Of a DNA stretch of 64,000 bases, positions 3,862-58,543 are shown in pieces. This stretch comes from Antechinus flavipes (lineage: Eukaryota). The translations under genes were made by a program, and so were the position numbers. Position 1 is the stretch's first letter; the number at the start of each line of letters is the position of its first letter. The DNA lies in NCBI RefSeq assembly GCF_016432865.1, contig NC_067400.1, forward strand, positions 617,210,001 through 617,274,000, in the 5' to 3' direction. The notes beneath the pieces were generated by a model. It had not been told where the DNA came from. It made no database searches and worked only from the letters and a program-made list of their open reading frames with translations.

Positions 3862-6800
3862 CTAATCCTTCTTCTTGTCCTCTGCCGGCTTGGGGGCGGG
3901 CCCCTGGTCCTGGCCAGGGAGGGGGCCATCCCCACTGGGGGCTGCGGGCGGCGTCAGGGCCGCCCCCGCCGTCTGCGCCTCCCCGCTCATGCCGAACTCG
4001 TTGACCCGCGTGGGATCCACCCGGTATATCCACCGCTGATAAAGGTAGATGAAGAAGACCACGTCTGGAAGAGCAGAGAGAGCGGTGAGGGCCGGCCTCG
4101 GCCTCCCCGGGGCACCTTCCTCGGGCCCCGGCCCCTCTGGGCCTCCCCACTCAGGACTTCACGAGGACCAGAAGGCAGGGACCTTCCCAGGCCAGTCCCC
4201 ACTTCCCCCTTGGACACAAGGTCCCACAGCCAGGATTTGCCTCCCAAGGATGTGCTGGAGCCGCTCCCAGACCCAACTGGGCCTGAGAGTTGGGGTCCCG
4301 GGGTCCCAGTGCCCTAGGAGCCACCGGCCGCCCCTTGTCCTAGTCGCGCCCCCCCCCCCCCGCCCCAGGCGGCCCCGGCACATAGTGGGGCTGCAGGCAG
4401 GGCTCACCATCTCGGAGACAGCCAATCCGGTACATCACGGGCATCTTGATGACGAAGGCAAACAAGTCGTCGATGAAGGTGTTGAGGGCCTTGTAGGTCA
4501 GCATGCGCCAGGGCAGGTGAGCCACGGACTTGAGCTTGTAGTTGATGAAGAGCTGGGGCGTCATGGTGATGAAGCCTGGGGAGGCCGGAAGGGAGCGGGT
4601 GAAAGCCACGCCCGCCGAAGGGCCTCGGGCCCCCCACCGGGGCTCCCCGCCACGCTGGCCCCACAAGGCCTCTGGCCGCCTGGTGGCTGCCCGGTCCCGA
4701 TGGAGCACCGAGCTTGGGGGACAGCTCAGGGCAGCGGGAGCATTTGCTGTCCAGGTGTCTGACCCGCAAGCAGCACCCCTGTTCCCACACTGGGGGGTGG
4801 ACACACGGTCGGGAGGGACCCACAGTCTCCCCCTTCTCCCTCAGCCGGGACCCCTGGGTCCGCATCTCCAGCACGGCCCACCCTCCCGGGCTGGGGGCCT
4901 CGGGGCAGGGAAGTCTGCAGCAGCTGGGCCCGGTCCTGGTGGGGCCTCAGCCCCCCTCCCCCCGTCACCAGCCCTAAGCTATCCCAGTGCAAACAGGGCT
5001 GAGGGGGTTGGGGAGCCGTCGGGCCCCCTCAGAGCTCTGTCCATGTGCCATGTGCCCAAGCCCAGGAAAGTCGGGGGCCCCAGTGCGGTCAGCACGGCCC
5101 GTCCAGCCGCTTCCTGCTGGCAGGAGGGCACTCGGCCCTGAGGAAGGGGCTCACCGAAGGTCAGCAGGAAGCCATAGAGCATGCTGAGCACCCACGAGTA
5201 CCAGCCCTTGTGCTCCATGTACAGGAGGCTGTAGACAGCGTAGCAGCCCAGCAGGGGGAACAGGATCCAGGACAGGTACCTGAACGCCATCTGGGGGGGG
5301 GACGAGGGGGGTCGGCTCACTCCGGCCCCTCCCTCCCCTTCCACCCTGGCTCCCAGGCTGGCTCCCCACCCATGGGACTTCCCAGGTGACACAGGACTTT
5401 GAGCTTCTTGGCAGGCGTCGGGGTGTGCACGTGGCCGCGGGGCACATGGCGGCGCTCCCTCCCTCCGTAGTTCTCCAGGGGTCACAGCCCCCCCCTTCCC
5501 TGATATCCTTCAGCATCCAGGGCTTGCCCGCCCCCCCCCCCCCCGGCCCTGCCCCCTGCGCTCACATCATCATAAACTTTGGTGGAGGACTCGATGTACG
5601 TGGACTTGTCCTTGAAGGTCAGGCGGGGGAACACACCGGCCACCTTGTTCTCTCGGTCCAGCTAGAGGGGAAAGGAGAGTGGGCGAGGGAGGAAGGCCCT
5701 TCCCCGCAAGGAGCACGCCGATGCCCCTTTATTCCCCAAGCCCCAAGGGGCTCCTCCTGTCTCAGAAAATCCCCAATACAAATTCCCCGATCCTTATGGG
5801 AGTGCAGCCCTGGAAACTCCCTGGTCCTGCCCTGGGAGCCGGGACAAAGGGGTCTGCACTCACCCAGTGGGGGGGCTGGGGGTCAGGAGCCTGCTCTCCC
5901 CAGGGGGGCTGGGGTCTGCACTCACCCAGTGGGGGGGCTGGGGGGTCAGTGCCGTCCCAGCAGAGTGGGACCCTTACCCGAACATCCATGACCTTGGTTA
6001 TCTTCCACAGGTCGATCAGAACACCAATGAAGACGCTGACCTGGACCACAAAGTTGGTCTCATTGTCCAGGATGTAGAGAAGGACCACGAGCGACTGGAA
6101 CACGCCAAAGAAGACCGAGCGGACCGAGAGACCCTCCAGGGACTGCCGGCTGTTCCAGAACTGGATGTCTGTAAGCCCGAGGGGAGGAGGGGGTTGGGGG
6201 AAGGAAGCCATAGACGAGGGGGCTCCGAGGAGCAGGGCTGTCTGGGCGCCCCCTTGGCCGGCCTCTGCCCGGAGCCGGGGCGCCCCCTGGTGCCGGGACC
6301 CTCTCTTCGGTCCCAGAGCCTGGAGTTCCCCTTGGCCCTGCTCGGGCTCCCCTGGCCCGTTCCCTAATCCCCTGAAGCCGGGGTGGGGGCAGGGTGGGGC
6401 TTCCCTGGCCTCTGCCTGGAAGGGCCCGCCTGTCACCCCACCCTTCCCCAGTCCCTTTCCCAGGCTGCCCCGCAGTCAGAAATGGTGCCATCCAGCCTCC
6501 ACCAGCCTGGGAGCCAGCGCGCTGAGAAATGGGGCGGGAGGAAAGGGCGGCACCTCTCCCCCCCCCCCCCCCCCCCCCCCCCCCGGTCACAGCGGGCAGG
6601 GGCCCTCGAGGCTGGGCGGCCCCTCCCCCAGCACCGAGAGCGGCCCCTACCGTTCTTGAATGCCAGGAACTCGAAGACGCTGTGGACGATGGAGACGATG
6701 ATGGTGAGGGCCAGGAGGTAGGGGTTGGTCTCCAGCAGGGCCACCTAGAACGGGCGGAGCAGGCAGGGTCCCAGTGAGCCCGGGAAGTTAAGAGATGAGG

Positions 6801-9800
6801 GATGAGGAGAAGAGGGGCAGGGGGCCGCCCTCGCGCCCCCCGGGCCCAGTCCTCCAAGTGGCGGCACCGAGGACCCCAAGCTCAGGGATCAGGGTGGGAG
6901 GGAGGAGACCAGCCCCCGAGTGCCGAGCGCCCCCTAAGTCTGCTCTCGTTTCTCTCCACAGGACCCCCGGGGAGGGGGAGGGGCCGAGGCGCGCAGGACT
7001 CGCACTCGGGCCCGGGACGGGGCCGGGCGTCACCTTGACCGAGTCCTGCTCCTCGTCCGACTGCTCGTACAGGTCTTCGCCCAGGAAGTTCCAGGGGGAG
7101 CGGGTGCTCTGGGCCGCGTAGAGCTGCCAGCGCCACAGGGACAGGGGGCAGAAGGAGAGGCGCAGCGGCAGGCTGGCCAGCGTCTCGTTGATGGGGTAGT
7201 AGTCCCTCTGCAGGTTCCAGTAGTCGTTGAAGTAGATGATGGGGTAGTAGTCCCCGCTGACCGCGTCGAACTGCACGTCTGCGGGGGGCGGGGAGAGGGG
7301 GCTCAGGGCCCGAAGAGCGAGGGGAGCCCGCGGGGAGGGGGAGGGGTGGCCACCACAGCGTGCGGGCCCCAGGCTGCGCCCACACAAGGGCCGGCAGAGG
7401 CGGCCATCCTGGGGCCCTTCCCCAAGGCAGCACCCGCATCTCCTGGGCCCCGGGGTCAGCGCTCGCTACACAAGACCCCCCGGCCCTCCAGGGAGTCAGG
7501 ACCCAGAAGCGGGAGGGGGGGGCTTACACTGGTCCAGTGGCGGAGGGACGCTGCCCTTCACCCAGGGCGTGTGGTCGTCCACAATGTTGATGGTGAGGTT
7601 CGGGTGCCAGTGGGAGATGACCTCCACCGGGCCAAAGTCTTCTGCTCGCTGCGGGGGCAAGAGCACTGGCACGTGAGCCTGAGGGGGCCCCGCCTGTGCC
7701 CAGAACTCCCGCCCATGCCCCCACGTGCCGCCTGCGAAGCAGCACGGACCGCTCGGAGACCGCCACGCCTCCCTTCCTGCTCTCCAGGGCTCAGGGCCCG
7801 CGAGTGTCAGAACCGGGAGCCGAGCCCTCTGCTGCGGGGGGAACGGAACGCGCCTCGCCGCCCCCAGGGCCTCCCCTGCCGCGATGCCCCCCACGCCCAG
7901 CAGCGCGACCTTCCAAGCCTCTCCTGGAGCCCCCGATTCCGGGTCACCAGGTCACCGTCTAGGCAGGCGACTGACTCTTCCTCCCTCATGCCCCTCAAAT
8001 GCGCCCCTGCCTTTCCCTGTCCCTCTCCCCGCCCCGGCCTCCGAGGCAGCCGCGGCCTTTCTCCGTCACAACTGGGTCCCCGGGCAGGGAGAACATCCAG
8101 GCCTGGTGGGGGAGGGCCCCGGCCAAGGAGAGAAGGGGCTCCGAGGGAGAGGCTGTGGAGGGGGCTGCAGACGAGCCGGTCTCAGCAGTGGGTGGTGGGA
8201 GTAAGGGGGCCGAGGGCCCTCCCTCCGGGCAGCGCGCCCCTCAGCCGGTCCCGTGGTCTGTGCTGGGCCCGGTTCTCCCTCCTCTCTCTAGGTTCCCCTG
8301 ACTGGAGCCATGATCCTGGGATCTAGTTCTCTCGGCCTCCTCATGGTTCGCCTCCCCCCCTTAGCCTTCCCTGGGGCTCCCCGTCTCTCCGCGCCACCTC
8401 AGGAGCTGCTTCCCCTGGGAGCGGAGGTCTCTGAGAGGCTTCAGCTGCACTGAGCTTTCTCCCATCACTGGCCAACCCTAAGTGCTAGCCCCCTCCCCAC
8501 CTCCATACTCCCTGTGACACCTGTCCTGAGCCCCCGCCTCCCCACCGCCTGTGACTGACAGCTGTCCCGAGCCCCCCCTCCCCCCCACTGCCTGTGACTG
8601 ACAGCTGTCCCGAGCGCCCCCTCCCCCCCACTGCCTGTGACTGACAGCTGTCCCGAGCGCCCCCTCCCCCCCAGTGCCTGTGACTGACAGCTGTCCCGAG
8701 CGCCCCCTCCCCCCCACTGCCTGTGACTGACAGCTGTCCCGAGCGCCCCCTCCCCCCCAGTGCCTGTGACTGACAGCTGTCTCGAGTGCCCCCTCCCCCC
8801 CACTGCCTGTGACTGACAGCTGTCCCGAGCGCCCCCTCCCCCCCACTGCCTGTGACTGACAGCTGTCCTGAGCGCCCCCTCCCCCCCACTGCCTGTGACT
8901 GACAGCTGTCCCGAGCGCCCCCTCCCCCCCACTGCCTGTGACTGACAGCTGTCCCAGGTCCTGATCCATTCCTCCCACTCGCACCCTGAAAGCTACTCGT
9001 CCCCTGCCACGGGAGCACGGAGCAATGGCGGACGCCTGCATCCTGGCACACGGGGCTTTCTTCTGCTTCTCCGCAGGGACTTTGAGTTTTAAACGTCTTT
9101 CATTGGAACCCGGCTCCCCGGGGCGTCTTCCCCTCTCCCCTTCCTCCCCAGGCCCGGGGCTCTCCTTACGAGCTCACACGTGACCCCACTGGGAGACCCG
9201 CGGGCCCCCTTCCTTCCCGGGGTTCTGCGAGCACTCCTCTGGCTGCGGGAGAGGCTGACGCGGACTTCCTCCGCCGCTCCCTCGAGAACCTCCCCACGCC
9301 CCGGGACCACCCAGGGCAGCGCCAGGAGGGCCTTGGAACAAGGGAGCCCGGCCCCCCGGGAACGTCCGCCTTCCCCAATTACCTTGATCATCTCTGGGTC
9401 TGCTTCCGTCTCGCCCGTCAGCAGGTTCTTGGTCTTCTGAAATCGCCTTCGTTTATACTTGTTGATCACTGCAGAGGAGGGTGGGGGAGGGAGAGACTGT
9501 GAGTGACCCCCCCAGCAGCCTGTCCCCCTCCCTGCCCAGCTCTGGTCCCGTCTCCCTGGTTCTAGGGGGCCAGTGCTCCCCGGCCCGCTGCCTGCGAGGT
9601 CCCCGTGGCGACCCCAGGCCCACCTCTGCGCCCAGGCTCCCGGGGCCGCCTCCGCCGGCCCGCCCTCAGGGGAGCAGAGGAGGCTGCAGAAGCTCTAGCC
9701 CCCACCCCCTCCTCCCATCACGGGCCAGTTCTCCCACTGCCCCGGCAGCCTCCTCACACTGACCGGCCCACTTCCCCCTCCCCAGCCCCCCTCCCTGAGG

Positions 9801-12800
9801 GCTCCCCTGGCGGACACAGCAAGGGCCCCTCTAGGGGGAGGGGGAAGGGCCCGTGCTCCCCCAACCCTGCCCGCGGGCCTTACTTCGGGACGTGTGTACA
9901 GTGGCCAGCCGCCTGTACAGAGCCTTCTGTTTGGGGTCCGGGTGGAAGCCGCTCTTGGTGAAGTACACGTGGATGTACATGGAGCCGTTCTGCTGGACGC
10001 TCTGGAGGACAGACGGACGCAGTGACTCCCCTGCAGCGCTGGGCAGGGCCCGGCCCCTCACTGGGCAGCCTTGGCCCGGGCCGGGCCCTGCCGCCAGAGC
10101 TTCCCCACCTGACAAATGGGGCTGCTCTCGAGCCCCGGCCTCAGGGCCTTCGTGGCCACCCCAGGCCTCCCAAGGGCGGGAGCCTTCCCTGTTGGCACAA
10201 GTGCCCGCTCCTTCCTGAGTCTGGCAAAGGCCCTCGGGCACCACCCGCCCGCACCCCCTGCTCCCAGTCCCCCGGCCAGGCCAGATTCCCAGACTGAGCT
10301 GGAAGGCCCCCAGCACAGAGGTCATTGAGGCAGGACCCCCCCCCCCGGGGTCCCCGCTCCCGGGCGCAGGGATCTCGCCGACACCCCCGGCTCCCCACAG
10401 GCACATGTGCCGGCACTCAGGGCCTCTGCCTCCCGGGCCCCACTACAAGAAGCCGCTCCTCCCCCGTCCCTCCCGGAGGCTGGGGCTGTTCTCCTTTTTG
10501 TTCCTTTGCCCTTTCCTTCTCCAGTTCATTTTACAGATGAGGAAACTGAGGCAGATGGGATGAAGGGACGTGCCCAGGGTCACTCTGCTAGGAAGGGTCT
10601 GAGACTCCAGGCCCAGGATCCCCTGGTGGCCACAGGCACTGTTTTGCCCCTTGTTTCCCTGGGGCTGAGCACACAGTAGGTGCTTTGTCGGTGCTCCTGG
10701 CTGGGCCAGACCAGCCCCCCTAGAGTGCCCCCCAGGGCCAGGCCGGGTCCCTAAAGTGAAAGTCCCAGGGAGCGACCCCTCTCGGCCCCCCCAGGCCCAG
10801 GGGGAGACGCCGGGGGCGGGCGGGGTCTCACCGGCGGGATGTCCAGCTCGGCGTAGTGCTCGTAGCAGCCGTCCGCGTTCTCCCCGCTGGTCCAGTCCCC
10901 GTAGACCAGGTCCTGCTGCTCCCAGAAAAGCGCCGAGGTGGTGTTGAAGTCTGTAAAGTGCTCATGCTCGGAGATGTACACGTGCAGGTTCTGGGGGGAC
11001 AAGGGCTCCGTCTGGCTCCGAGGGCCGACCGGGGGTGGGGGTGGGGGGAGAAGTGCCCTTCCCCGGGCCCCACCCCCCGGGGGCTCAGCTGCTCCCCCCC
11101 GCCGGCCCCCCCCTCTCACCATTAAAGTGTCTTTTGGGAAGAGGTTGCGGCTGGGGACCCGGGGGGCGCCCCCCGGGCTGGTTGGGTCCTGTGGAGCCGG
11201 CCCACGACGAAACCAACAGCTGATGGCCCAGATAATGAAGATCCTGAGGGTGGGAGGGGAGAGGTAAGGGAGGCTCCCCGGGAAGCGGGCGGGGGCTGGG
11301 GGAGGGGCCCTCCCCGCCAGGCGGCACGGCCTGGCACCTCGGTGCTGTGTGACCGCAGGAGAGCCTGCAGTCTCTGGGCCCTGGGGACCCCGAAGTCAGG
11401 CCACAAAACCCCAGGGAGCCACGGGAAGTCTGAGGGCACCCGGGGCCTTGCAGAGACCCCCAGAGCCCCCCCCTCTCCTGGAAGTGTTGGCTCCCTGCGG
11501 CTGCCCCCCACGGGGCCCCAAGCGAGGCAGGACCCCCCCAGACGCGGGCTCTCCCCCCGCCCCGGTGCTGGGGCCGCCTCAGGTTCCTGGCTTCTCGCTG
11601 GGGAAGGGAGGGGGCAGATTTGGAGCTGGGAATAAGGACCAAAAAGTCGGAGCTTTAGAAAACCAGGGACTAAAGAGACTCACTTTGGGGCGGGGGGAAG
11701 GCCAGAGGGGCCGGGGGCCTCCCCAGGAGGCAGGGCGGGGACTCCCCCCCACTCTAATCCAAGGAGGGGGTCTGAGGACCTGGGTGCAAATCCTGCCTCT
11801 GACATTTCCTGGGGAGCCAAGGTCCCGTCTCTAAGGGGAGGCTCCCTACACCCCCATGAGGGACGAGTCCCGGCGGGGGGAGCACGCTGCAGGTGCGCCG
11901 GGGGAGGGGAACAGCCGGAGTCCCCCCGAGGGTCCTGGGCAGAGCCAGAAGCCCGGGGCTGGAGGCAGCCGGGAGATAAGGCAGGCCCGGCCTCAGGGAG
12001 CCCCTGGGCAGGCGATCCGGCCCGAGCACCGGCTCCCTTCTGCCCCCCCCAAACAACCCAAGAGAGTCAGGGGGGTGAGAGTCCCGGAGGGAGGGTCCCA
12101 GGCCCCTCTGATGCCCAAGGGCTCCGTCTGGCTCCGAGGGCCGACCGGGGGTGGGGGTGGGGGGAGAAGTGCCCTTCCCCGGGCCCCACCCCCCGGGGGC
12201 TCAGCTGCCCCCCCCGCCCGCCCCCCCCTCACCATTAAAGTGTCTTTTGGGAAGAGGTTGCGGCTGGGGACCCGGGGGGCGCCCCCCGGGCTGGTTGGGT
12301 CCTGTGGAGCCGGCCCACGACGAAACCAACAGCTGATGGCCCAGATAATGAAGATCCTGAGGGTGGGAGGGGAGAGGTGAGGGAGGCTCCCCAGGAAGCG
12401 TGCGGGGGCTGGGGGAGGGGCCCTCCCCGCCGGGCGGCACGGCCTGGCACCTCGGTGCTGTGTGACCGCAGGAGAGCCTGCAGTCTCTGGGCCCTGGGGA
12501 CCCCGAAGTCAGGCCACAAAACCCCAGGGAGCCACGGGAAGTCTGAGGGCACCCGGGGCCTTGCAGAGACCCCCAGAGCCCCCCCCTCTCCTGGAAGTGT
12601 TGGCTCCCTGCGGCTGCCCCCCACGGGGCCCCAAGCGAGGCAGGACCCCCCCAGACGCGGGCTCTCCCCCCGCCCCGGTGCTGGGGCCGCCTCAGGTTCC
12701 TGGCTTCTCGCTGGGGAAGGGAGGGGGCAGATTTGGAGCTGGGAATAAGGACCAAAAAGTCGGAGCTTTAGAAAACCAGGGACTAAAGAGACTCACTTTG

Positions 12801-15800
12801 GGGCGGGGGGAAGGCCAGAGGGGCCGGGGGCCTCCCCAGGAGGCAGGGCGGGGACTCCCCCCCACTCTAATCCAAGGAGGGGGTCTGAGGACCTGGGTGC
12901 AAATCCTGCCTCTGACATTTCCTGGGGAGCCAAGGTCCCGTCTCTAAGGGGAGGCTCCCTACACCCCCATGAGGGACGAGTCCCGGCGGGGGGAGCACGC
13001 TGCAGGTGCGCCGGGGGAGGGGAACAGCCGGAGTCCCCCCGAGGGTCCTGGGCAGAGCCAGAAGCCCGGGGCTGGAGGCAGCCGGGAGATAAGGCAGGCC
13101 CGGCCTCAGGGAGCCCCTGGGCAGGCGATCCGGCCCGAGCACCGGCTCCCTTCTGCCCCCCCCAAACAACCCAAGAGAGTCAGGGGGGTGAGAGTCCCGG
13201 AGGGAGGGTCCCAGGCCCCTCTGATGCCCAATGGCCCCGACCCTGCCCCCCAGATCAGGGCTCCCCTTGGTGGGGAGGGGACACCCAGCTGGGCCCTCAC
13301 CACTCGCTGCCTTCCCAAGCTGGCGTCCATGCCCCTGGCCTCTGACCCTCCCTCGGGCCGTCTCCGCCCATGCTTCCAGAACCTTAGCCCCACAAGGTCA
13401 GAGGTCAGAGTGGTCAGCACGGCTGCCCACTCCCCTCCAGGCCCGTGCTCCCCTCCTTCCTCCCAAGCGTCTGAGACCCCCCCATGTCTTCCTTCCTCCG
13501 AGGCCCTGATGCTTCCTCCTCCTTAGCCAACCCCCCCCAAGCAAGTGGGATCTCTGGGCCCTCCCACGGCCCCCGGCATTGCCCCCCGCCTCATCCCCGC
13601 CTGTGCCCTTTGCCCCCTGGCGGTCCCACAGGCCCCTCTCTTCTCTGGACTATCACAGCCCCCCCCCCCCCCCCCCCCGCTGTCTGGCCTAGGTCTGACG
13701 TCACCTCCCACGTAGCCCCACGGAAGCTCCCGGAGCCAGCAGGGGGCTCCACAGGCTGCCCCCCTGAGGACCCTCACCGGTTACTGACCGAACCGGACAA
13801 GTGAGAACACCCCAGGAAGGCAGACGGAACGAGGGCGCCCCCCGGCAAACTCTCAGGGGGGGGGGGGGGGCCGGGGGCAGGCCCGAGGAGGAGGCGGCTG
13901 GGGCTCCGCTCCTCGGGCCTCTCCCGGACTGGGCGAGTCCTTTCTGAACCTCCGTGGCCTGGGCCTGCCTCCGCCCTGAGGGAGCCCGGCTCCGGCTGTT
14001 TCCAAGGTCTCCGGGACCCTGGGGCTGGGACCCCCGTGACGCCCTTGCTGGGGCAGCCAGCAGGTGGCAGTGTCCGAGGCTGGGCCTCCGCGGGAAGGAG
14101 CCCGCCACAGCGCTGACCACAGGGGGGCGCCTCGGGAGCAGGCTCTGAGCCGCTCCATCTCCCCCCAGCCTGTCCCGGGGGGTCGAGGCCATTCCCTCCT
14201 CTCCACCACAGCCACCCCTTGTGGAAAAGGCCCTGCCAGACAGCGGCTCCCGCGGGGCCCAAACCCTGCACCACGGGGCAGAGCAGCTGTTCCCGAGACC
14301 CCTTCTGCTCCACACTGGTGACACCCCCGCCCTCCCAGCTCCCACCCCCAGGATGGGGAAGATCCACCCGAGGCAGGTTCTGGCTCCTCCCACCCACAGG
14401 CCGGCCCTGACCCAAGCCCTCGCCCCCTGCCCGGACCCAGACCCGGGGGCCTGACTTTCAGCCTCCAGTGAATCAAGCGCTTCCTCCCCGCTCTAGGAGC
14501 TTATTCCAAGAAGGGCCCACGGCACAAAACGGAGAGAAGCCTCTGCTCCGGCCCCTGCCTTCGATGCAGCTGCAGGCGCAGCCTCCCCCCGGCCTGTTCC
14601 CTTCCAACTGCAGAACCCCCCACCTCCTGTCCCCCCGAGGCTCCCCCTCCTGCCCGTCTCTCCCGGGGGGCCCACGCCGGGCCCGCCCTCTCTCCCTGCC
14701 TCCCCAGGGAACCAGCTTTCCTCAGGCCTGGGCCCCGGGGGCCTCTGGGAGAAGCCCTTCTGAGATGGCCCGGCCAGCTTCCCCCCCACCTGGGCCCGCA
14801 CAGAGCAGGCCCCGTAGCCAAGGAAACTGCGAGGGCCACGATGGGGACGAGACACTAAAGCTGCTGAGCCCGCCCGGGCCGCCCTGATCCAGGCCGAGCC
14901 CCCGGAGCAACGCCCTGTCCGGCCCAGCCGCGCACGGGGAGGGACGCCGAGGGGCCCGGGCGCTGCGGGAGCCCGGTGGGGGTGGGGGGGAGGGGGTCCC
15001 TTACCTGAACAACACACCTTTGATGACCTGCCAGGCGTTGGGGGCGGCCTGCGGGGCCCGGTTCTGTTGCTGAGTCTCTGTGGGCGTTTCTCCTCCAACG
15101 CTGCCATTGCTGGTTACCTGGGAGCCGGGATGGAAACGCGGGGGTCAGGAAGGGGCCCCGCTCCAGGGCAGCCTTGGGGACCTGCCACATTCCCGGGGGA
15201 GACGTGAGGAAGCTCCAGCCCGCACGGGTCAGCGCGGTCTCCGGGACCAGCTCCCTGCCTGCTCTGCCTCAGCCCCTCCGGACCCCCCACGGCCGCCACG
15301 TCTGGTCTTCGAGCACCCTCCCCACTCCCGAGGGCTAGAGCCCACACCACCATCTGCCTGGCGCAGTCAAGGAAACCGAGGCTCCAGGAGGGGCCTCCCC
15401 CAGAGCCCTCTCCCAACCCTTTGTTCCCAGTGCCATCAGGCCCCGGGAAAAGTCTCCCAAGCCGGCCCTGGGACAATCAATCACGGCCTCCGGACAGAAA
15501 GGGCCATTTCCCACCCTTGCGGGCACAGGAAAGGCTGGAAGGCGGAAGACCTCCCCCTGGCCAGGTGACCCGGCCACCCCCCCTCGGGGTCTCAGGCTTG
15601 CAGGACCAGGCTCCCACCCTCATTTGACAGATGGGGAAACTGAGGCCCAGGGCAGGGAAGGGCTTCACCAGCCGCGGCCCCGGAGGCCTGGCAGCCAGGG
15701 ACGTGCTGGTGACCTTGGCAGAGCCCTTGAGGCTCCCTGGGCCTCGCTTTCCCCAGCTTCCCCAGAGGCCGGGGGGGCCTCGGAACCGAGCCCCGCTGCT

Positions 15801-17990
15801 GGGGCTCCTGGGGAGAGCTCGGCCACCTGCCTCTGCCCTGCGCCCGGGGGCCACCTCCCAGGGGAGGCAAGCGACACTCTCAAGGTCACCCCGCCCTGAC
15901 AAGAGCGAGGGCCTTCCCAGGCGGGGGTGGGGCGGGGGGCAGGCGCTCGGCCGGGGTCCCTGCTGACAGACAGACCAGCCAGAGCCTGGGACGGAAGCGA
16001 CCTCCCGACCCTCTCCTGCTCCTCAAAAAACGGCTTAAAAACAAGTTTCCAAAGCCACTCTTCCAGAAGAAAACCTTTCCCACGTGGGAGCACTCTGAGG
16101 GCGGGCGTTCCCCTGCGGCCCAGCCGGGCCCCCCAGCTTCTCTGGCCCGGCCCCCTCCTGACCCACCCTGCAGCTGCCAGTCCTGCCTTCTGCTCCCATG
16201 ATGCTCTGTCACTTCTGGCCCCGAGGGAAGGGCCCGGTCTCGGGCAGGGCAGCCACCCCTCCCTGAAGCCCCCAGCCCCGGCCCCTGAGGGAGGCCAGGA
16301 AAGGGCAGTGACCCACAGGGGCCGGACCCCACACCTGCACCCTCAGATTTTGCAGCCACTGCTCTGGCCCCCGCAGGAGGAGGGGACCCGGACTCGGGCC
16401 CTCCGACTCCCCTGAGGCCTTGGGCAGTCAGTTTCCCTGTGGGGCAGGGGGGCGCCCCCTGGTGGGTGACCTTGGGTGAGCCCCCCACTGGCCTGGAGAC
16501 CAACCCCTCCCCCGCCTCCCCCCAGCCCCAGGGGGCCCAGCGCCTCACCCCCCTCCCGCCCCAGGGCCACCCTCTGGCCTAGGCCTCCCTGTCGGGGCAG
16601 CTTCCAAGGCACAGGGTGGGCGGGCAGGACGGGCGGGCAGCTGCCTGGGCCACCCGAGGGTCCTGACCAGCCGGATGCGGGCGGGCCCCGGGCCCCACCT
16701 TGTGCCCTGCTTCAGGAAGCTGCCCCGGCTCATCAGGGTCCCCAAGATTCTGGTGCCATCCGTCAGCCTGGGGCCGAGGGAGCCAGAGCGCGCCGGCTGC
16801 CCACATGCCCCCTTAGCCTGGGAGACACCCCTCGCCCTGGGGGGGCTTCCCCACTCCCCGCCCCCACAACCAAGCTGGCCTGGCAAACCCACAGAACCTG
16901 GAATTAGTTACTGCAGCTGTGGATGGCAAGCGCGTTCCTCCCTCCGGACCTCAGTTTCCCCCCGTAAATCGGGGGCGCCCTGCAGTCCTAAATGCTGGCT
17001 CTGAAGGCCCGCAGGGCCGAGACCCTGGGGCAGGGAGGGGGGGGGAAGGGAAGGGCCCCTCCTCCCAGCCTTCAAAATAGGGAGAGGGCAGAAGGGGCAG
17101 CCACAGGCCTGTGTCCCTGCCGGGGGGGGCACAGAGGGTCGGGCCGGGAAAGCAGCCAGTGGCCAGGGGGTCTGGGGGCACAGCCAGGGCAGACGGGAAG
17201 GGAAGCCTCAGGAGGGAGGGCAAGGCCCTGATGGAGGAGCCCGGGGAGCCCAAAGCCCGGCCTTTGGACGGAGTCACCCCGAGCCGGGCCTGCTGGGAGG
17301 CCCCTGTCTGCCTCAGTTTCTCTGCCTGTGACTTAGGGCTAAGGACACGTGTATGACTGGTGCCTGTCCGTCCGCCCTCGGAGCCATCTTCCCCGCCACG
17401 CTCCCACCCCGGCCGCCACCGCACAGTGGAGCAGAAGCGAGACCGACCCCTTGAGAACGAGGGGGGGGGGATCGAGGGGCTTCCGTGGGTCCGAGCTTTG
17501 ACAGACACGAGGAGGGGGGGATTTCTAGAACCCCCCACCCCCCAGTGGGCGGCACACCTAGGGGAGGAGGGGGACACGAGGCGGGCGGGGGCGAAGGACA
17601 CCTCTGGGAGACCCTCGCCCTCTGGGAGCGGTGGGGGGCAAAAAACCCTCGAGCGAAGAGACCCGGGCCGGGAACAGGTGGGAGCCGCAGACGCTGGGGG
17701 AGGGGCCCACGGCGCAGCGAGGGGCGGGGGCGCGCCCCGGAGGGGGCAGGATGGGGGTCGGGGGGCCGCCGGGAGGCGTCGCGGGGCTCGGGCCCGGCGC
17801 GGGAAGGGCCCCGCCGGGGAGGCCGCGCTGCGCCGCCCCGGGTCTGGCCGCACCAAGCTGCTGGCGGAGCCACCGGCTTTCCCCCCCACCCGACAGCCTG
17901 TCCGCCTACCTGCCCGGAACCGCCTCCGGTCACCGTCGCCGCAGCCGCCACTTCGCTTGGGCTCCCGTCTGCCTCCTGCGCAGCCGCCAT
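3862..17990 (-). CDS. CLPTM1: CLPTM1 multi-pass ER membrane protein (putative lipid scramblase family), 14 coding exons, 644 aa
   Basis: Exons: 17990-17910, 15117-15005, [12356-12233 or 11243-11120], 10990-10832, 10001-9884, 9468-9383, 7648-7528, 7278-7034, 6744-6651, 6168-5978, 5661-5566, 5290-5155, 4575-4408, 4064-3862. Sum 1935 nt, intact frame with one exon-3 copy. Starts MAAAQEADG, ends KPAEDKKKD (dilysine ER motif). Internal exon sizes match human as recalled. Confidence 0.96.
8510..8955. repeat. 43-bp minisatellite (10 copies plus a partial) in CLPTM1 intron 6
   Basis: Unit GACTGACAGCTGTCCCGAGCGCCCCCTCCCCCCCACTGCCTGT; cores start at 8553, 8596, 8639, 8682, 8725, 8768, 8811, 8854, 8897, 8940. 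Confidence 0.95.
11000..13231. repeat. Head-to-tail ~1.11-kb tandem duplication containing CLPTM1 exon 3
   Basis: Copy A 11000-12115 and copy B 12116-13228; exons 11120-11243 and 12233-12356 are identical; CAA is shared at all three borders. Confidence 0.95.
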
Positions 17991-45645: not shown

Positions 45646-47454
45646 CTAGTGATTCTTGGAGAAGGTCGAGTCTATTTTGTCCTTTATTTTCTGGAAGCTC
45701 TGCTTGAACCAGTTCCTATGGAGAAAAGGGGCGCTGTGAACCGGTGGGGTCCAGGGAACAGCCCTCATCTACCTCTCCCAGAATGACCTGCGTGATTCCC
45801 CGGGACTAACTCCCGGAGACCAAGGAAGTTAATCCTCCTCTCTGCAAGGAAAATGAGGCCGGGCCCAGATCCGGGGTTCTTAATCTGGGGTCTGTAAGCC
45901 TTTTTTTTTTTTTTTAAACAAAAAATATAGTGAGTCATATATCATTGGTTTCCTGGGTAACGCTGCTTGTTTTGTTTAATGCGTGCAAAAGCACTCGCAG
46001 GGTTCAGCAGCCTGCCGGAGGGGTCTGTGAAGAAGGCTAAGAACCCCTCGCTGGGGATCTGGAAGGTTCCCCCCCAAGTTCCAAAGTCTAGAACTTCAAA
46101 TTCATTCTCGGGTCCAAATACACACCTGACTGGGCCCCCAGCTCACTGATGGCTCCCAGGCCCTGCCAGAAACCCTCGCCCCTTTCCCTTGGGGTTCCCT
46201 GTCCTTCAAAGTCCCCCCACCCTTTTCAGACTCATGGAGCCCATGCTGCCCCCCCTTCCCCTCCCCCTCCAAGGCCCCAAGCCCAGGAAGGTGCTCCACT
46301 TGTCCGCCCTGGGTGCTGCAGGAGGGGAGTGGGAGGCGGGGCGCCACACCTAGTTTTGGTGGAGAATTCGCTGTGCTGGATCTGGCTGATGACGGACTTG
46401 GCTTTGTCTGACAGCTCCTTCAGCTTGTGCTGGAACTGGTCAAAGCCCTCGGCCACGCTGGAGGAAGCCTGGGCTGGGCTGGGGCCCTCTGCAAGAGAGG
46501 AGCGCCCCTGAGCTCTGGGAGCCCGGCCAGGAGGAGGCTGGGAGTGCTCAGTTAGGGGAGGCTGGGAGTGCTCAGTTAGGGGAGGCTGGGAGTGCTCAGT
46601 TAGGGGAAGCTAGGAGTGCTCAGTTAGGGGAGGCTGGGAGTGCTCAGTTAGGGGAGGCTGGGAATGTTCAGTTAGGGGAGGCTGGGAGAGCTGTTAGGGG
46701 AGGCTGGGAGTGCTCAGTTAGGGGAGGCTGGGAGAGCTGTTAGGGGAGGCTGGGAGTGCTCAGTTAGGGGAGGCTGGGAGTGTTCAGTTAGGGGAAGCTA
46801 GGAGTGCTCAGTTAGGGGAGGCTGGGAGTGTTCAGTTAGGGGAAGCTAGGAGTGCTCAGTTAGGGGAGGCTGGGAGTGTTCAGTTAGGGGAGGCTAGGAG
46901 TGCTCAGTTAGGGGAGGCTGGGAGTGCTCAGTTAGGGGAGGCTGGGAGTGCTCAGTTAGGGGAGGCTGGGAGTGTTCAGTTAGGGGAGTCTGGGAGTGCT
47001 CAGTTAGGGGAGGCTGGGAGTGCTCAGTTAGGGGAGGCTGGGAGAGCTGTTAGGGGAGGCTGGGAGAGCTGTTAGGGGAGGCTGGGAGTGCTCAGTTAGG
47101 GGAGGCTGGGAGTGCTCAGTTAGGGGGCCTGGCGGGCCGGAATAGCTCAGAACCCAGCGGTGGGGACGGGATACTCCAGAATCCAGAAGGGGGGGGGGCC
47201 CGGGCAGAGAGACGAGGGAAAAGGGGCATTAGACCAGTGAGTGGTGGTTTTGGAATCCAGGAGGGAGGTTTTATAAGACTGAGGGTAAAGGTTGGGGGGG
47301 ACCGAGGGGACACCCTGAGATCTTTGGTCGGGGATTCTAAGTGGGGGAGGGTGAGAAGAAACAGTAGAACTGAGGGTGGGGGGACAGCCCCCCACGTACC
47401 TGCCAAAAAGTACAGAAGTACCGCCAGCACCGTGAAGGACAGGAACGGTTTCAT
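45646..47454 (-). CDS. APOC1: Apolipoprotein C-I, 87 aa precursor
   Basis: Exons 47454-47400 (MKPFLSFTVLAVLLYFLA-E), 46488-46350 (GPSPAQASSSVAEGFDQFQHKLKELSDKAKSVISQIQHSEFSTKT-R), 45715-45646 (NWFKQSFQKIKDKIDSTFSKNH*). Matches human MRLFLSL...EGPAPAQG...DKAR...SEL...WFSETFQK. Confidence 0.92.
46536..47123. repeat. 24-bp G-rich minisatellite (~24 copies) in APOC1 intron 2
   Basis: Unit GGGGAGGCTGGGAGTGCTCAGTTA, with 22-bp variant GGGGAGGCTGGGAGAGCTGTTA. Confidence 0.95.
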
Positions 47455-55557: not shown

Positions 55558-58543
55558 TCAGCCGATGGTGAGGCCGAAGCCGCACTGGAACTTGTTCTTT
55601 CGGTGATTGAGGAAGGCGCCCAGGGCCAGCGTCAGGGGCAGGGGGGGCAGCTTCTTCTCCAGGGTCGCGCCCACGATCCAGTTGCTGTCCATGGAGCCTG
55701 GGGGGAGACGAGGGGGAGACTGGGCATCTGAGGGGGCAGGCCGGGGGCGGCCCGTCTCCCGCAGACTCCGGGGGGCGGGGGCTACCTTTGAAGAGGAGGT
55801 TGGCCTTGGGCAGGTCCAGTTGGTAGCCGAAGGAGACGCTAGTGTCCTGCATCCGGGTGCTGGCTTCAAACTCCACCCCGACCTGGAGCTGGAGAGAGCC
55901 CCGAGGGTCAGCGGGGAGACCCCGGCCCAGCCCGGCCCGGCCCCCCGGCCCCTACCTCGCCCTCACCTGGTCGCTGGCTTTGTGGTAGTAAGTGGCGTGG
56001 GCCCCCGCCTGGCCCACGGTCAAGGTCGCCAGCCAGTTGGGCGCTGGGGGAAGAGACACGAGAGCGCTCAAGCACCCCGAGGCTTTGCGGGGCACCCCCC
56101 ACCCCAGAGTGCAGCCCCATACCTGTGTACTTCCCTGCCAGGGACATGACGGTGCCCTCCTCGCCCGGCCTTCGGTGATAAACCAGCTCCCCGCCCAGGG
56201 CCAGGCACGGGGTGATGCTCTGCAGGTAGTGAGCCACCAGGATCCCTGCGGACGGGGCGCGTGGTCAGCCCGGGGCCCGCCCTCCCTCCCCTTCTCGGCC
56301 CCACCGCCCGCCACCACGACCGGACCAGAGACCCAGGCTCTCTCTCCAGGCGCCGGGTGCGCGCTGCCCCCGGCCTCCTGACACGGGGTGGAGCGGCCCC
56401 CGCCCGGCGGCCTCACCTGAGCCCACCAGCACGTCGGGGTTCCCCAGGGTCACCGCGGCCGTGAAGTCCGAGCCCCGGTACTCTCCGTCCACCTGCCAGT
56501 TCACAAACTTGGACTGCTGCGTCTGTGAAGGAAAGGGGGACGCGGGGCGCTCAGCCCTGGCTTGGAGGCCCGAGGCTTCCCTGGTGCCGCGCCCGGCGCA
56601 CACTCACCTGCACCGCCATCTTGGAGCGCAGCCCTGGCCCCACCTGGTGGATCACCTGGGCGTTGAGGCTCCCACAGTTGTCCATGTCTCCCACCAGCAC
56701 CGGGAAGGCCTGGGGAAGGTCATGATTATGTAAGGAGATGGGGGCGGCTGGAACAGGTGGTCAGGGGGCATGGGGGGATCAACTGTGTGGTCAAGGACTG
56801 GGGGGATTGTCTGGGAGAGGTCAGGGACATAGTGGGATTATGTGGGGGCAAGAGAGCATCATGGGAGTGTCCGGGAGAGCTCAAGGGGAGCAGTAGGATC
56901 ATCCTAGGGGCCAAAGAGCATCATGGGATTGTCTGGGAGAGCTCAGGGAGTGCAGTGGGATTATGCAGGGGCCCAGAGAGCATCATGGGATTGTTTGGGA
57001 GGGTCAGGGGGTGCAGTAGGATTATGTGGGGGGCCAGAGAGCATCATGGGATTGTCTGGGAGGGTCAGGGGGTGCAGTGGGATTATGTGGGGGGCCAGAG
57101 AGCATCATGGGATTGTTCGGGAGGGTCAGGGGGTGCAGTGGGATTATGTGGGGGGCCAGAGAGCATCATGGGATTGTTCGGGAGGGTTAGGGGGTGCAGT
57201 GGGATTATGTGGGGGGCCAGAGAGCATCATGGGATTGTTTGGGAGGGTCAGGGGGTGCAGTGGGATTATGTGGGGGGCCAGAGAGCATCATGGGATTGTT
57301 CGGGAGGGTTAGGGGGTACAGTGGGATTATGTGGGGGGGCCAGAGAGCATCATGGGATTGTTCGGGAGAGTTAGGGGGTGCAGTGGGATTATGTGGGGGG
57401 GCCAGAGAGCATCATGGGATTGTTCGGGAGGGTCAGGGGGTGCAATGGGCCAGGTGTGGGGGACCCCTCTCACCTCGGTGGGGCTGAGCTGCTTGGTCCC
57501 CACGTAGGTGACCCCAAAGTGGTAGTTGGAGTCTCCGATGGTGCTGAGGGCCACGGTGTGATTGACCTGCAGAGAACAAGGGCCTGAGTGCCAGCCAGGC
57601 ACCCACTCCCTGCCCTGGGGGGAACGGGGCTCGGGGCCTCACCTGGAAGTGGTTGCTGAGGCCCTTGTTCACTGTGAGCTTCACGCCCTCCATCTGCACA
57701 GGGAACAGCTCTGTGGGGGGAAGGGGCCACAGTGTTTTGCCAGTGCCCTGGGGGGGAGGGGGAGCTACAGCTCTCAGATGGGGAAACATTCAGGGGGTCG
57801 GACAAGCTCCCCATCTCGCCTCTGAAAGGGGTGTGAGGATGCGGTTCCAGTCCTCCCCAGACCCCTCCCTGCCATGATTCTGCCAAGTCGGTCCTGATTT
57901 CACAGATGGAGAAACTGAGGCCCCCTAAGATGGATGAATGGCAGCAAGGGCCTGGATTAGCACTCAGGTCCCCTGCCTACAAAGCCAGAAGCTCTGAAGC
58001 CCCCCCCAGCCCTCGGGGTTCCGTGCTAGGGTTCTTCTGCTCTAGGGGTGGGGGTGCTGTTCTAAAAGCCTCCCCCGGGGAGGCCGCCAGGGGGCGTCTC
58101 CCGCACAGCGGGCCGGGCTGCGGCCGGAAAGATGAGGGTTCGAATCCGGTCCCGAGACTTCCCGGCCGGGAGGCCCAGGCGCCGGGCACCCAGTGGGGTC
58201 GCTCCCGTCCCTCCCCTCAAGCCCTCAGTGCCCCGCAGAGGCGCCCCCTCTTTCCGCCCCCCTCCCCCCGGCAGCGCTCACCCTTGCACTTGCGGTGGCA
58301 CTCCTCAAACGTGCCGGGGTTGGGGAGGCACCAGCTGGCCTGGTCCACCGGCTTCGGGGCCCCGCTCGCAGGGGCGCCCGGGACTCCTCCGCGGCCGCCG
58401 GACGCCGCGCTCAGGCCTCCCATGGGGGGCAGCGTGAAGCCCGGAGGCGGTGGCGGGAGCGGCGGCGGCGCGGCCACGAGGCCCGGGCCGGACGGGGGGG
58501 GCGGCCCCGCGGGCGGCGAGCTAGCGGCCAACACGTTGCCCAT
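55558..58543 (-). CDS. TOMM40: Mitochondrial import channel TOM40, 9 coding exons, 357 aa
   Basis: Exons 58543-58282, 57710-57643, 57566-57474, 56709-56608, 56522-56417, 56245-56123, 56043-55967, 55888-55786, 55697-55558; sum 1074 nt. Runs [17 protein letters not shown]...[19 protein letters not shown]...[12 protein letters not shown]. Confidence 0.97.
56790..57445. repeat. 61-bp minisatellite (~10 copies) in TOMM40 coding intron 3
   Basis: Unit GAGGGTCAGGGGGTGCAGTGGGATTATGTGGGGGGCCAGAGAGCATCATGGGATTGTTCGG; decays toward 56790. Confidence 0.92.

What the first reader, a model, noticed from the sequence alone, without database searches (positions are those of the whole stretch)
11000..13231. 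Tandem duplication of a frame-shifting CLPTM1 exon 3
Seen: two identical 124-nt exons (11120-11243, 12233-12356), each with an intact AG/GT. The exon is phase 2 to 0, so including both shifts the frame (DLHYLGHQLL...RHFN-EPARVHLRA*) to a TGA at 10964-10962 in exon 4, an NMD substrate. The intron between copies is 989 nt, so nothing sterically forces mutual exclusion. A 3-bp CAA microhomology marks all borders, as in microhomology-mediated duplication. Inference: either a young real allele that must use one-of-two splicing (a nascent mutually exclusive or poison-exon switch tuning CLPTM1 dose) or a false duplication of two haplotypes in the assembly.
Basis: partly seen in the sequence, partly recalled or inferred. 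Interest (0 to 1): 0.8.

Follow-up and report, generated by a model that had tools for sequence, protein, structure and literature searches.

The report
Probable false duplication of CLPTM1 exon 3
The yellow-footed antechinus reference assembly holds two back-to-back, nearly identical 1.1-kb copies of the piece of CLPTM1 that carries exon 3; this is most likely an assembly error, or else a rare broken allele, and nothing supports a new splicing switch.

Summary
The window is Antechinus flavipes assembly GCA_016432865.2, and CLPTM1 lies on the minus strand. A head-to-tail duplication (copy A 11000-12115, 1116 nt; copy B 12116-13228, 1113 nt) contains two identical 124-nt copies of exon 3 with intact AG/GT. 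Including both copies shifts the frame to a TGA at 10964-10962.

The copies differ at only 7 sites: 5 substitutions and 2 G-run indels. All 7 lie within 226 nt flanking the exon, none inside it, and the other ~800 nt are identical. Two independent Tasmanian devil assemblies have a single copy. Either exon copy alone reproduces the annotated 644-aa protein exactly.

The assembly was built from PacBio CLR reads with wtdbg, then Pilon, from a highly heterozygous animal. The paper mentions no haplotig purging. The locus is 65-75% GC.

My reading is a false exon gain, about 0.6. A real, probably heterozygous, loss-of-function tandem duplication is about 0.3. An evolved one-of-two splicing or poison-exon switch is at most 0.05: both copies have equally strong splice signals, and no exclusivity mechanism beyond frame arithmetic was found.

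No reads or transcripts of this species could be reached, so the question stays open.

The scan's first readers noted similar kb-scale exon duplications elsewhere in this genome (SGSM2, STOML2, GUCD1, GRIN2D). I did not test those notes.

The parts
3862..17990 (-). CLPTM1 coding span: 14 coding exons when one exon-3 copy is used
   Evidence: An exact spliced reconstruction of the RefSeq 644-aa protein P0269. L001 and L002 are exact substrings of the window.
11000..12115 (.). Duplication copy A (1116 nt): the 3' 872 nt of intron 2, exon 3 and the first 120 nt of intron 3
12116..13228 (.). Duplication copy B (1113 nt)
13229..13231 (.). CAA microhomology, also at 11000-11002 and 12116-12118
   Evidence: The chance of 3 bp or more at a random junction here is 0.09.
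11120..11243 (-). Exon 3, copy A (124 nt, phase 2 to 0); donor GTGAGAGG
12233..12356 (-). Exon 3, copy B, identical to copy A; donor GTGAGGGG
11244..12232 (-). 989-nt hybrid intron between the copies: the 5' part of intron 3 joined to the 3' part of intron 2
12108..12128 (+). Novel junction 21-mer, unique in the window
11093..11319 (.). Cluster of all 7 differences between the copies (12208-12432 in copy B); none falls in the exon
   Evidence: P = 4e-4 for a span this tight under uniform placement.
10832..10990 (-). Exon 4; the premature TGA at 10964-10962 is read if both exon-3 copies are included
10991..11119 (-). Intron 3 (129 nt); the proximal breakpoint lies 10 nt upstream of the exon 4 acceptor
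15005..15117 (-). Exon 2
11022..11113 (.). Dense G-quadruplex-type motifs on both strands, just inside the unit start (repeated at 12138-12228)

Best explanation
This is most likely a false exon gain: the assembler laid down the same 1.1 kb of the CLPTM1 locus twice, in tandem. The two copies are probably the two haplotypes of the sequenced male. They differ in a small, unusually heterozygous, very GC-rich patch around exon 3, which stopped the assembler from merging them. On this reading the animal has an ordinary 14-exon CLPTM1, and neither a frameshift nor a poison isoform exists. What is shown: the structure, the pattern of differences, its absence in the devil, and how the assembly was made. 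What is inferred: that the join itself is artificial.
For: 1. The assembly used PacBio CLR reads corrected with Canu, assembled with wtdbg 1.2.8 and polished with Pilon using 100-bp reads. The word 'purge' does not occur in the paper. A. flavipes is reported to be far more heterozygous than the devil and twofold more so than its relatives (PMC9290055).

2. Ko et al. 2022 (PMC9516828) define 'false exon gain'. They find false duplications enriched where heterozygosity is locally raised, at boundaries between homozygous and heterozygous stretches. [quoted passage not shown]

3. That pattern is what is seen here. All 7 differences lie within 226 nt (P = 4e-4 for uniform placement) and are followed by about 800 identical nt.

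4. The substitutions look like natural alleles rather than random consensus errors. Three of the 5 substitutions are transitions and two sit at CpG sites, and none of the 7 differences hits the 124-nt exon, which makes up 55% of the span. Polarised against the devil, copy B is ancestral at all 5 substitutions and copy A is derived. This fits two alleles of one constrained locus.

5. The locus is 65-75% GC, against 36% for the genome, and is dense in G4-type motifs at the unit edge. Such sequence may be harder to read and polish (my inference, not tested).

6. Two independent devil assemblies carry one copy. The gene-position index gives one range each for wombat and wallaby, but two ranges for antechinus, broken exactly at the exon copies.

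7. Either copy alone gives the exact annotated protein.

8. Untested leads: first readers noted other near-identical 0.8-1.7-kb intragenic tandem duplications in conserved genes of this same assembly. If those hold up, they point to a systematic artefact.
Against: - There is no N gap between the copies, whereas most published false duplications have one.
- The junction carries a 3-bp microhomology (9 of 11 bases match if extended), as real replication-based tandem duplications do. This arises by chance at only 9% of random junctions here.
- A cluster of 7 differences in about 100 non-exonic nt next to 800 identical nt is odd for ordinary haplotype variation too.
- I could not name and verify the exact assembler step that would produce this join.
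- No read depth or read spanning the junction was available.
Confidence: 0.6

Rival explanations
1. The duplication is a real, lineage-specific tandem duplication arising by a microhomology-mediated replication error. It would be carried by the sequenced male, probably on one chromosome. Because both exon copies have equally good splice signals, most transcripts from that allele would include both copies. They would then hit the TGA in exon 4 and be degraded, so the allele acts as a null or a strong hypomorph and not as a regulated switch.
For: - The join is head-to-tail with a 3-bp microhomology and no gap.
- G4-type motifs lie within 60 nt of both breakpoints and could stall replication forks.
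- The junction sits inside a long contig (contig N50 is 51.8 Mb).
- The differences between copies could come from exchange with the single-copy allele, or from a consensus that mixes haplotypes.
Against: - A young deleterious allele should have identical copies, yet these differ at 0.6%, with natural-looking variants that avoid the exon.
- The prior chance of catching a heterozygous frameshifting exon duplication in any one conserved gene is small.
- Several look-alike cases are reported in the same assembly (untested), and those are easier to explain as an artefact.
Confidence: 0.3
2. The duplication is real, common or fixed in A. flavipes, and handled by obligate one-of-two splicing. Double inclusion or double skipping would be removed by nonsense-mediated decay, giving a nascent mutually exclusive pair, or a poison exon that sets CLPTM1 dose.
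For: - The frame arithmetic works: +124 nt gives a stop in exon 4, with ten exon junctions downstream.
- RefSeq lists two models, X1 and X2, with identical protein. The position index breaks at 11243 and 12233. This suggests each exon copy is used by one model.
Against: - The duplication is absent from both devil assemblies.
- The exons are identical, so no protein diversity results.
- The intron is 989 nt and both introns are GT-AG, so neither steric hindrance nor spliceosome incompatibility applies.
- The only inverted repeats are weak, GC-rich, low-complexity matches.
- The branch sites (CTTAC and CTCAC), the polypyrimidine tracts and the donors are equally good in both copies, so nothing favours choosing one.
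- Identical exons cannot be told apart by RNA-seq mapping, so the two RefSeq models are not evidence of how the exons are used.
Confidence: 0.05

Closest known systems
False exon gain / heterotype false duplication in genome assemblies (Ko et al. 2022, Genome Biol 23:205; PMC9516828)
   Same: An exon inside a conserved gene is present twice at about 99% identity. The differences look heterozygous and sit in a locally hyper-variable patch. The assembly was made from a heterozygous individual without a reported purging step. The duplication is absent in the sister species.
   Different: There is no assembly gap between the copies. Read depth, k-mer multiplicity and linked-read discordance, which are the defining tests, could not be examined.
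Microhomology-mediated intragenic tandem duplication (FoSTeS/MMBIR-type structural variants, such as frameshifting exon duplications in disease genes; from general knowledge)
   Same: The join is head-to-tail with a 3-bp microhomology. There is no target-site duplication and no transposon. Including the extra exon shifts the frame.
   Different: The copies are not identical, and their differences avoid the exon. There is no read-level proof that the junction exists.
Mutually exclusive exons born by tandem exon duplication, with exclusivity enforced by frame and nonsense-mediated decay (from general knowledge)
   Same: Two adjacent homologous exons have equal length and phase, the length is not a multiple of three, and including both or neither breaks the frame.
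   Different: The exons are identical and not diverged, they are not conserved (the devil has one), no selection mechanism was found, and no transcript evidence exists.
Poison exons coupled to nonsense-mediated decay (from general knowledge)
   Same: Including the extra exon would introduce a premature stop far upstream of the last exon junction.
   Different: Known poison exons are conserved, weakly spliced and regulated. Here the extra exon is an exact copy of a constitutive exon with full-strength signals.

Membership tests
False exon gain (assembly false duplication) | Near-identical copies whose differences behave like heterozygous variants | tested here: met
   The copies are 99.4% identical. 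Three of the 5 substitutions are transitions and two are at CpG sites. Copy B is ancestral at all five, and none of the 7 differences falls in the exon.
False exon gain (assembly false duplication) | An assembly gap between the copies | tested here: not met
   There is no N at 12115/12116. Ko et al. note that some false duplications are joined without a gap.
False exon gain (assembly false duplication) | Haploid or lower read depth, single-copy k-mers and no reads across the junction | not testable with these tools
   No reads were reachable. No contigs or transcripts of this species were found in the protein collection.
False exon gain (assembly false duplication) | Absent from independent assemblies of the same or a sister species | tested here: inconclusive
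   Two devil assemblies have a single copy. No second Antechinus assembly was reachable.
Microhomology-mediated tandem duplication (real structural variant) | Head-to-tail junction with short microhomology, and no transposon or target-site duplication | tested here: met
   CAA sits at all borders. The chance of 3 bp or more is 0.09, so this is weak evidence.
Microhomology-mediated tandem duplication (real structural variant) | The junction is present in sequencing reads | not testable with these tools
   No read data were available.
Mutually exclusive exon pair | Adjacent homologous exons of the same length and phase | tested here: met
   Both are 124 nt, phase 2 to 0.
Mutually exclusive exon pair | A mechanism that enforces exclusivity: steric hindrance, U2/U12 incompatibility or competing RNA pairing | tested here: not met
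   The intron is 989 nt and both introns are GT-AG. Only weak GC-rich inverted repeats are present. Frame plus nonsense-mediated decay would filter the products but would not choose between the exons.
Mutually exclusive exon pair | Diverged exons, conserved across species, that give alternative protein segments | tested here: not met
   The exons are identical, and the devil has one copy.
Poison exon | Inclusion creates a premature stop more than 50 nt upstream of the last exon junction | tested here: met
   The TGA at 10964-10962 lies in exon 4 of 14.
Poison exon | Regulated, usually weak splice signals, conservation, and an observed isoform sensitive to nonsense-mediated decay | tested here: not met
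   The splice signals equal those of the constitutive copy, and the exon is not conserved. The transcript part of this feature could not be tested.

The most novel reading that the evidence does not exclude
The duplication is real and common in Antechinus flavipes. CLPTM1 mRNA is then made by choosing one of two identical exon-3 copies, and double inclusion is cleared by nonsense-mediated decay. This would be a mutually exclusive exon pair caught at birth, before any sequence divergence.
Probability: 0.05. Interest if true: 0.55.

Novelty: not a real feature. Interest (0 to 1): 0.15.

Why it matters
If the duplication is an artefact, the value is practical. It flags a false exon gain in a RefSeq-annotated reference, which apparently forced two separate CLPTM1 models. 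It also suggests this assembly may carry a class of kb-scale false tandem duplications in GC-rich genes, which would mislead studies of gene gain, frameshifts or splicing in marsupials.

If the duplication is real and heterozygous, it is an ordinary private loss-of-function variant.

Only if it is real, frequent and spliced one-of-two would it be of wider interest, as a zero-divergence snapshot of how mutually exclusive exons begin.

Tried and rejected
1. Read-level or independent-sample evidence through the protein collections.
- I searched with the open frame spanning exon 4, intron 3 and exon 3, and with the N-terminal 200 aa of the antechinus protein.
- I also looked up exactly 10 ATG-started ORFs, including two that span the novel junction and ORFs that span the two outer borders.
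- No antechinus-derived contig or transcript was found. The closest fragments belong to other species.
- The short Logan member of the marsupial cluster turned out to be bacterial.

2. Other marsupials. The opossum and koala isoforms are not on record.

3. Literature on a wtdbg-specific mechanism for about 1-kb tandem duplications. Nothing usable was found. My recollection is that adjacent consensus units in that assembler overlap by roughly a node length and could be concatenated if the overlap alignment fails. That is unverified, and I do not rely on it.

4. A docking/selector RNA structure that could enforce exclusive splicing. Only weak GC-rich inverted repeats were found, so I rejected this.

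5. Other kb-scale near-identical tandem duplications in this window. There are none; only minisatellites are present.

6. Age from divergence. A divergence of 0.6% would imply an old duplication, but the clustering of the differences rejects clock-like accumulation.
Full report
**What is there**

Reading 10800-13400, the repeat search and a local alignment show one direct tandem repeat. Copy A is 11000-12115 (1116 nt) and copy B is 12116-13228 (1113 nt). CAA follows at 13229-13231; the same triplet opens both copies, so the junction can slide by 3 bp. Of 1123 aligned columns, 1116 match.

The differences are five substitutions (11104 G/C, 11266 A/G, 11280 G/A, 11288 G/T, 11319 A/G) and two indels in G/C runs (a T at 11093 and a 2-nt CT/TC unit at about 11113-11116, both missing in B). 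From 11320 to the end of the unit the copies are identical for about 800 nt. No other kb-scale repeat exists in the 64-kb window; only minisatellites are present.

**Which gene and which genome**

Open frames on the minus strand spell CLPTM1, from MAAAQEADG... near 17990 to ...PAEDKKKD near 3865. A profile-free search with one exon retrieved full-length CLPTM1. The marsupial cluster contains the Antechinus flavipes protein P0269 and the Tasmanian devil protein P0268, which differ at two residues.

The loci fetched for P0269 are exact substrings of the window. The window is therefore GCA_016432865.2, chromosome record CM028219.1, about 617,210,001-617,274,000.

An exact spliced reconstruction gives 14 coding exons that translate to P0269 residue for residue. 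Exon 3 is 124 nt, phase 2 to 0, and either copy (12356-12233 or 11243-11120) serves.

- The two exon copies are identical.
- Each has the acceptor ...ccctcag| and the donor |gtgag.
- The intron between them is 989 nt.
- Including both gives a 156-aa product that ends at the TGA at 10964-10962 in exon 4, with ten exon junctions downstream.
- The junction 21-mer is unique in the window.

The proximal breakpoint lies only 10 nt upstream of the exon 4 acceptor, inside a 129-nt intron 3. The unit is therefore the last 872 nt of intron 2, exon 3 and the first 120 nt of intron 3. The intron between the copies is a hybrid with normal ends.

The putative branch site differs by one base: CTTAC in copy A and CTCAC in copy B. 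Both fit yUnAy at about -23. The donors are GTGAGAGG (A) and GTGAGGGG (B). Nothing makes either copy a weaker or selectable exon. If the structure were real, double inclusion would be the default outcome.

**Comparison with relatives**

Two independent devil assemblies (GCA_902635505.1 and GCA_048593225.1) carry one copy; both antechinus copies align to the same devil interval. A devil transcript contig encodes the normal protein. The gene-position index lists one range each for wombat and wallaby, but two ranges for antechinus, ending exactly at 12233 and 11243.

RefSeq lists two accessions, named X1 and X2, with the same protein sequence. I infer that the annotation pipeline built one model around each exon copy. 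Because the exons are identical, this says nothing about which copy is actually used.

**Pattern of differences**

- All seven differences lie within 226 nt. Under uniform placement, P = 4e-4.
- None falls in the exon, which occupies 124 nt of that span.
- Polarised with the devil, copy B keeps the ancestral base at all five substitutions and copy A is derived. Copy B is derived only at the two G-run indels.
- Three of the five substitutions are transitions and two are at CpG sites. They look like natural alleles and not like consensus noise.

Clock-like divergence of an old duplication is rejected by the clustering. A very young duplication should show no differences at all. Two alleles of one constrained locus, differing in a small hyper-variable patch, fit best. 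Exchange between a real duplicated allele and a single-copy allele could give the same picture.

**How the assembly was made**

The sources are PMC9290055 and PMC9516828.

- Reads and pipeline: 100x PacBio CLR, corrected with Canu, assembled with wtdbg 1.2.8, polished with Pilon using 50x of 100-bp BGISEQ reads, then scaffolded with Hi-C. The word 'purge' does not occur in the paper.
- Heterozygosity: the species is reported as far more heterozygous than the devil, and about twofold more so than related species.
- Composition: genome GC is 36%, while this locus is 65-75% GC and dense in G-quadruplex-type motifs, including a cluster just inside the unit start.
- Published precedent: Ko et al. 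2022 define 'false exon gain'. They report that false duplications concentrate where heterozygosity is locally raised. [quoted passage not shown]

**Microhomology**

In simulated tandem duplications of 800-1600 nt placed at random in this region, 9% have 3 bp or more of junction microhomology. The CAA therefore favours a real mutational origin only modestly.

**What could not be done**

- No reads, contigs or transcripts of this species were reachable.
- Depth, junction-spanning reads and exon3-exon3 RNA junctions therefore remain untested.
- The raw data are public (PRJNA565840 and CNGB CNP0001147).

**Leads from the scan (not tested here)**

First readers noted other near-identical intragenic tandem duplications of 0.8-1.7 kb in this same assembly: SGSM2 exons 5-7, STOML2 exon 9, GUCD1 exons 1-3, the GRIN2D pore exons and a GEN1 exon 2 donor. 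If these are confirmed, so many disruptive duplications of conserved genes in about 40 Mb would point to a systematic artefact. I raised the artefact probability slightly on this account, but I treat it as a lead only. By contrast, a duplication in this genome that a follow-up judged real is shared with the devil and the dunnart.

**Verdict**

| Reading | Probability |
|---|---|
| False exon gain, most likely two haplotypes laid in tandem | 0.6 |
| Real, probably heterozygous, microhomology-mediated duplication acting as a null allele | 0.3 |
| Evolved one-of-two splicing or poison-exon device | 0.05 |
| Unassigned | 0.05 |

Interest is low unless read data show that the junction is real and frequent.

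Noticed in passing
window 3862-17990; records behind: RefSeq lists two CLPTM1 accessions, named isoform X1 and X2, with identical 644-aa sequence. The gene-position index holds two ranges that end exactly at the two exon-3 copies (12233-17990 and 3862-11243). The annotation pipeline probably could not thread one model through the duplication.
   Followed up: partly
window 10991-11119 versus L003:8249-8446: Intron 3 of CLPTM1 is about 110 nt shorter in antechinus than in the devil. The missing stretch in the devil lies between two CTCGGGCCGAG-like direct repeats, which suggests a small deletion in the antechinus lineage.
   Followed up: no
window 8515-8955: A 43-nt minisatellite, 10.3 copies at 95% identity, lies inside CLPTM1 intron 6 and is open in all three frames on the minus strand.
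   Followed up: no
window 46533-47126 and 56831-57449: Two further well-kept minisatellites: 24 nt x 25 copies and 61 nt x 10 copies, each at 92% identity.
   Followed up: no
window 36773-36930 and 37415-37920: There are two N runs, of 158 and 506 nt, only 484 nt apart. This is odd for an assembly with only 1107 contigs.
   Followed up: no
window 9500-14500: The CLPTM1 gene body runs at 65-75% GC in a genome of 36% GC. The gene holds 62 non-overlapping G4-type motifs, 20 on the plus strand and 42 on the minus strand.
   Followed up: partly
other pieces of the same genome (scan notes): First readers report several other near-identical 0.8-1.7-kb intragenic tandem duplications in this assembly (SGSM2, STOML2, GUCD1, GRIN2D, GEN1). 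Together they deserve one genome-wide read-depth check for a systematic assembly artefact.
   Followed up: no
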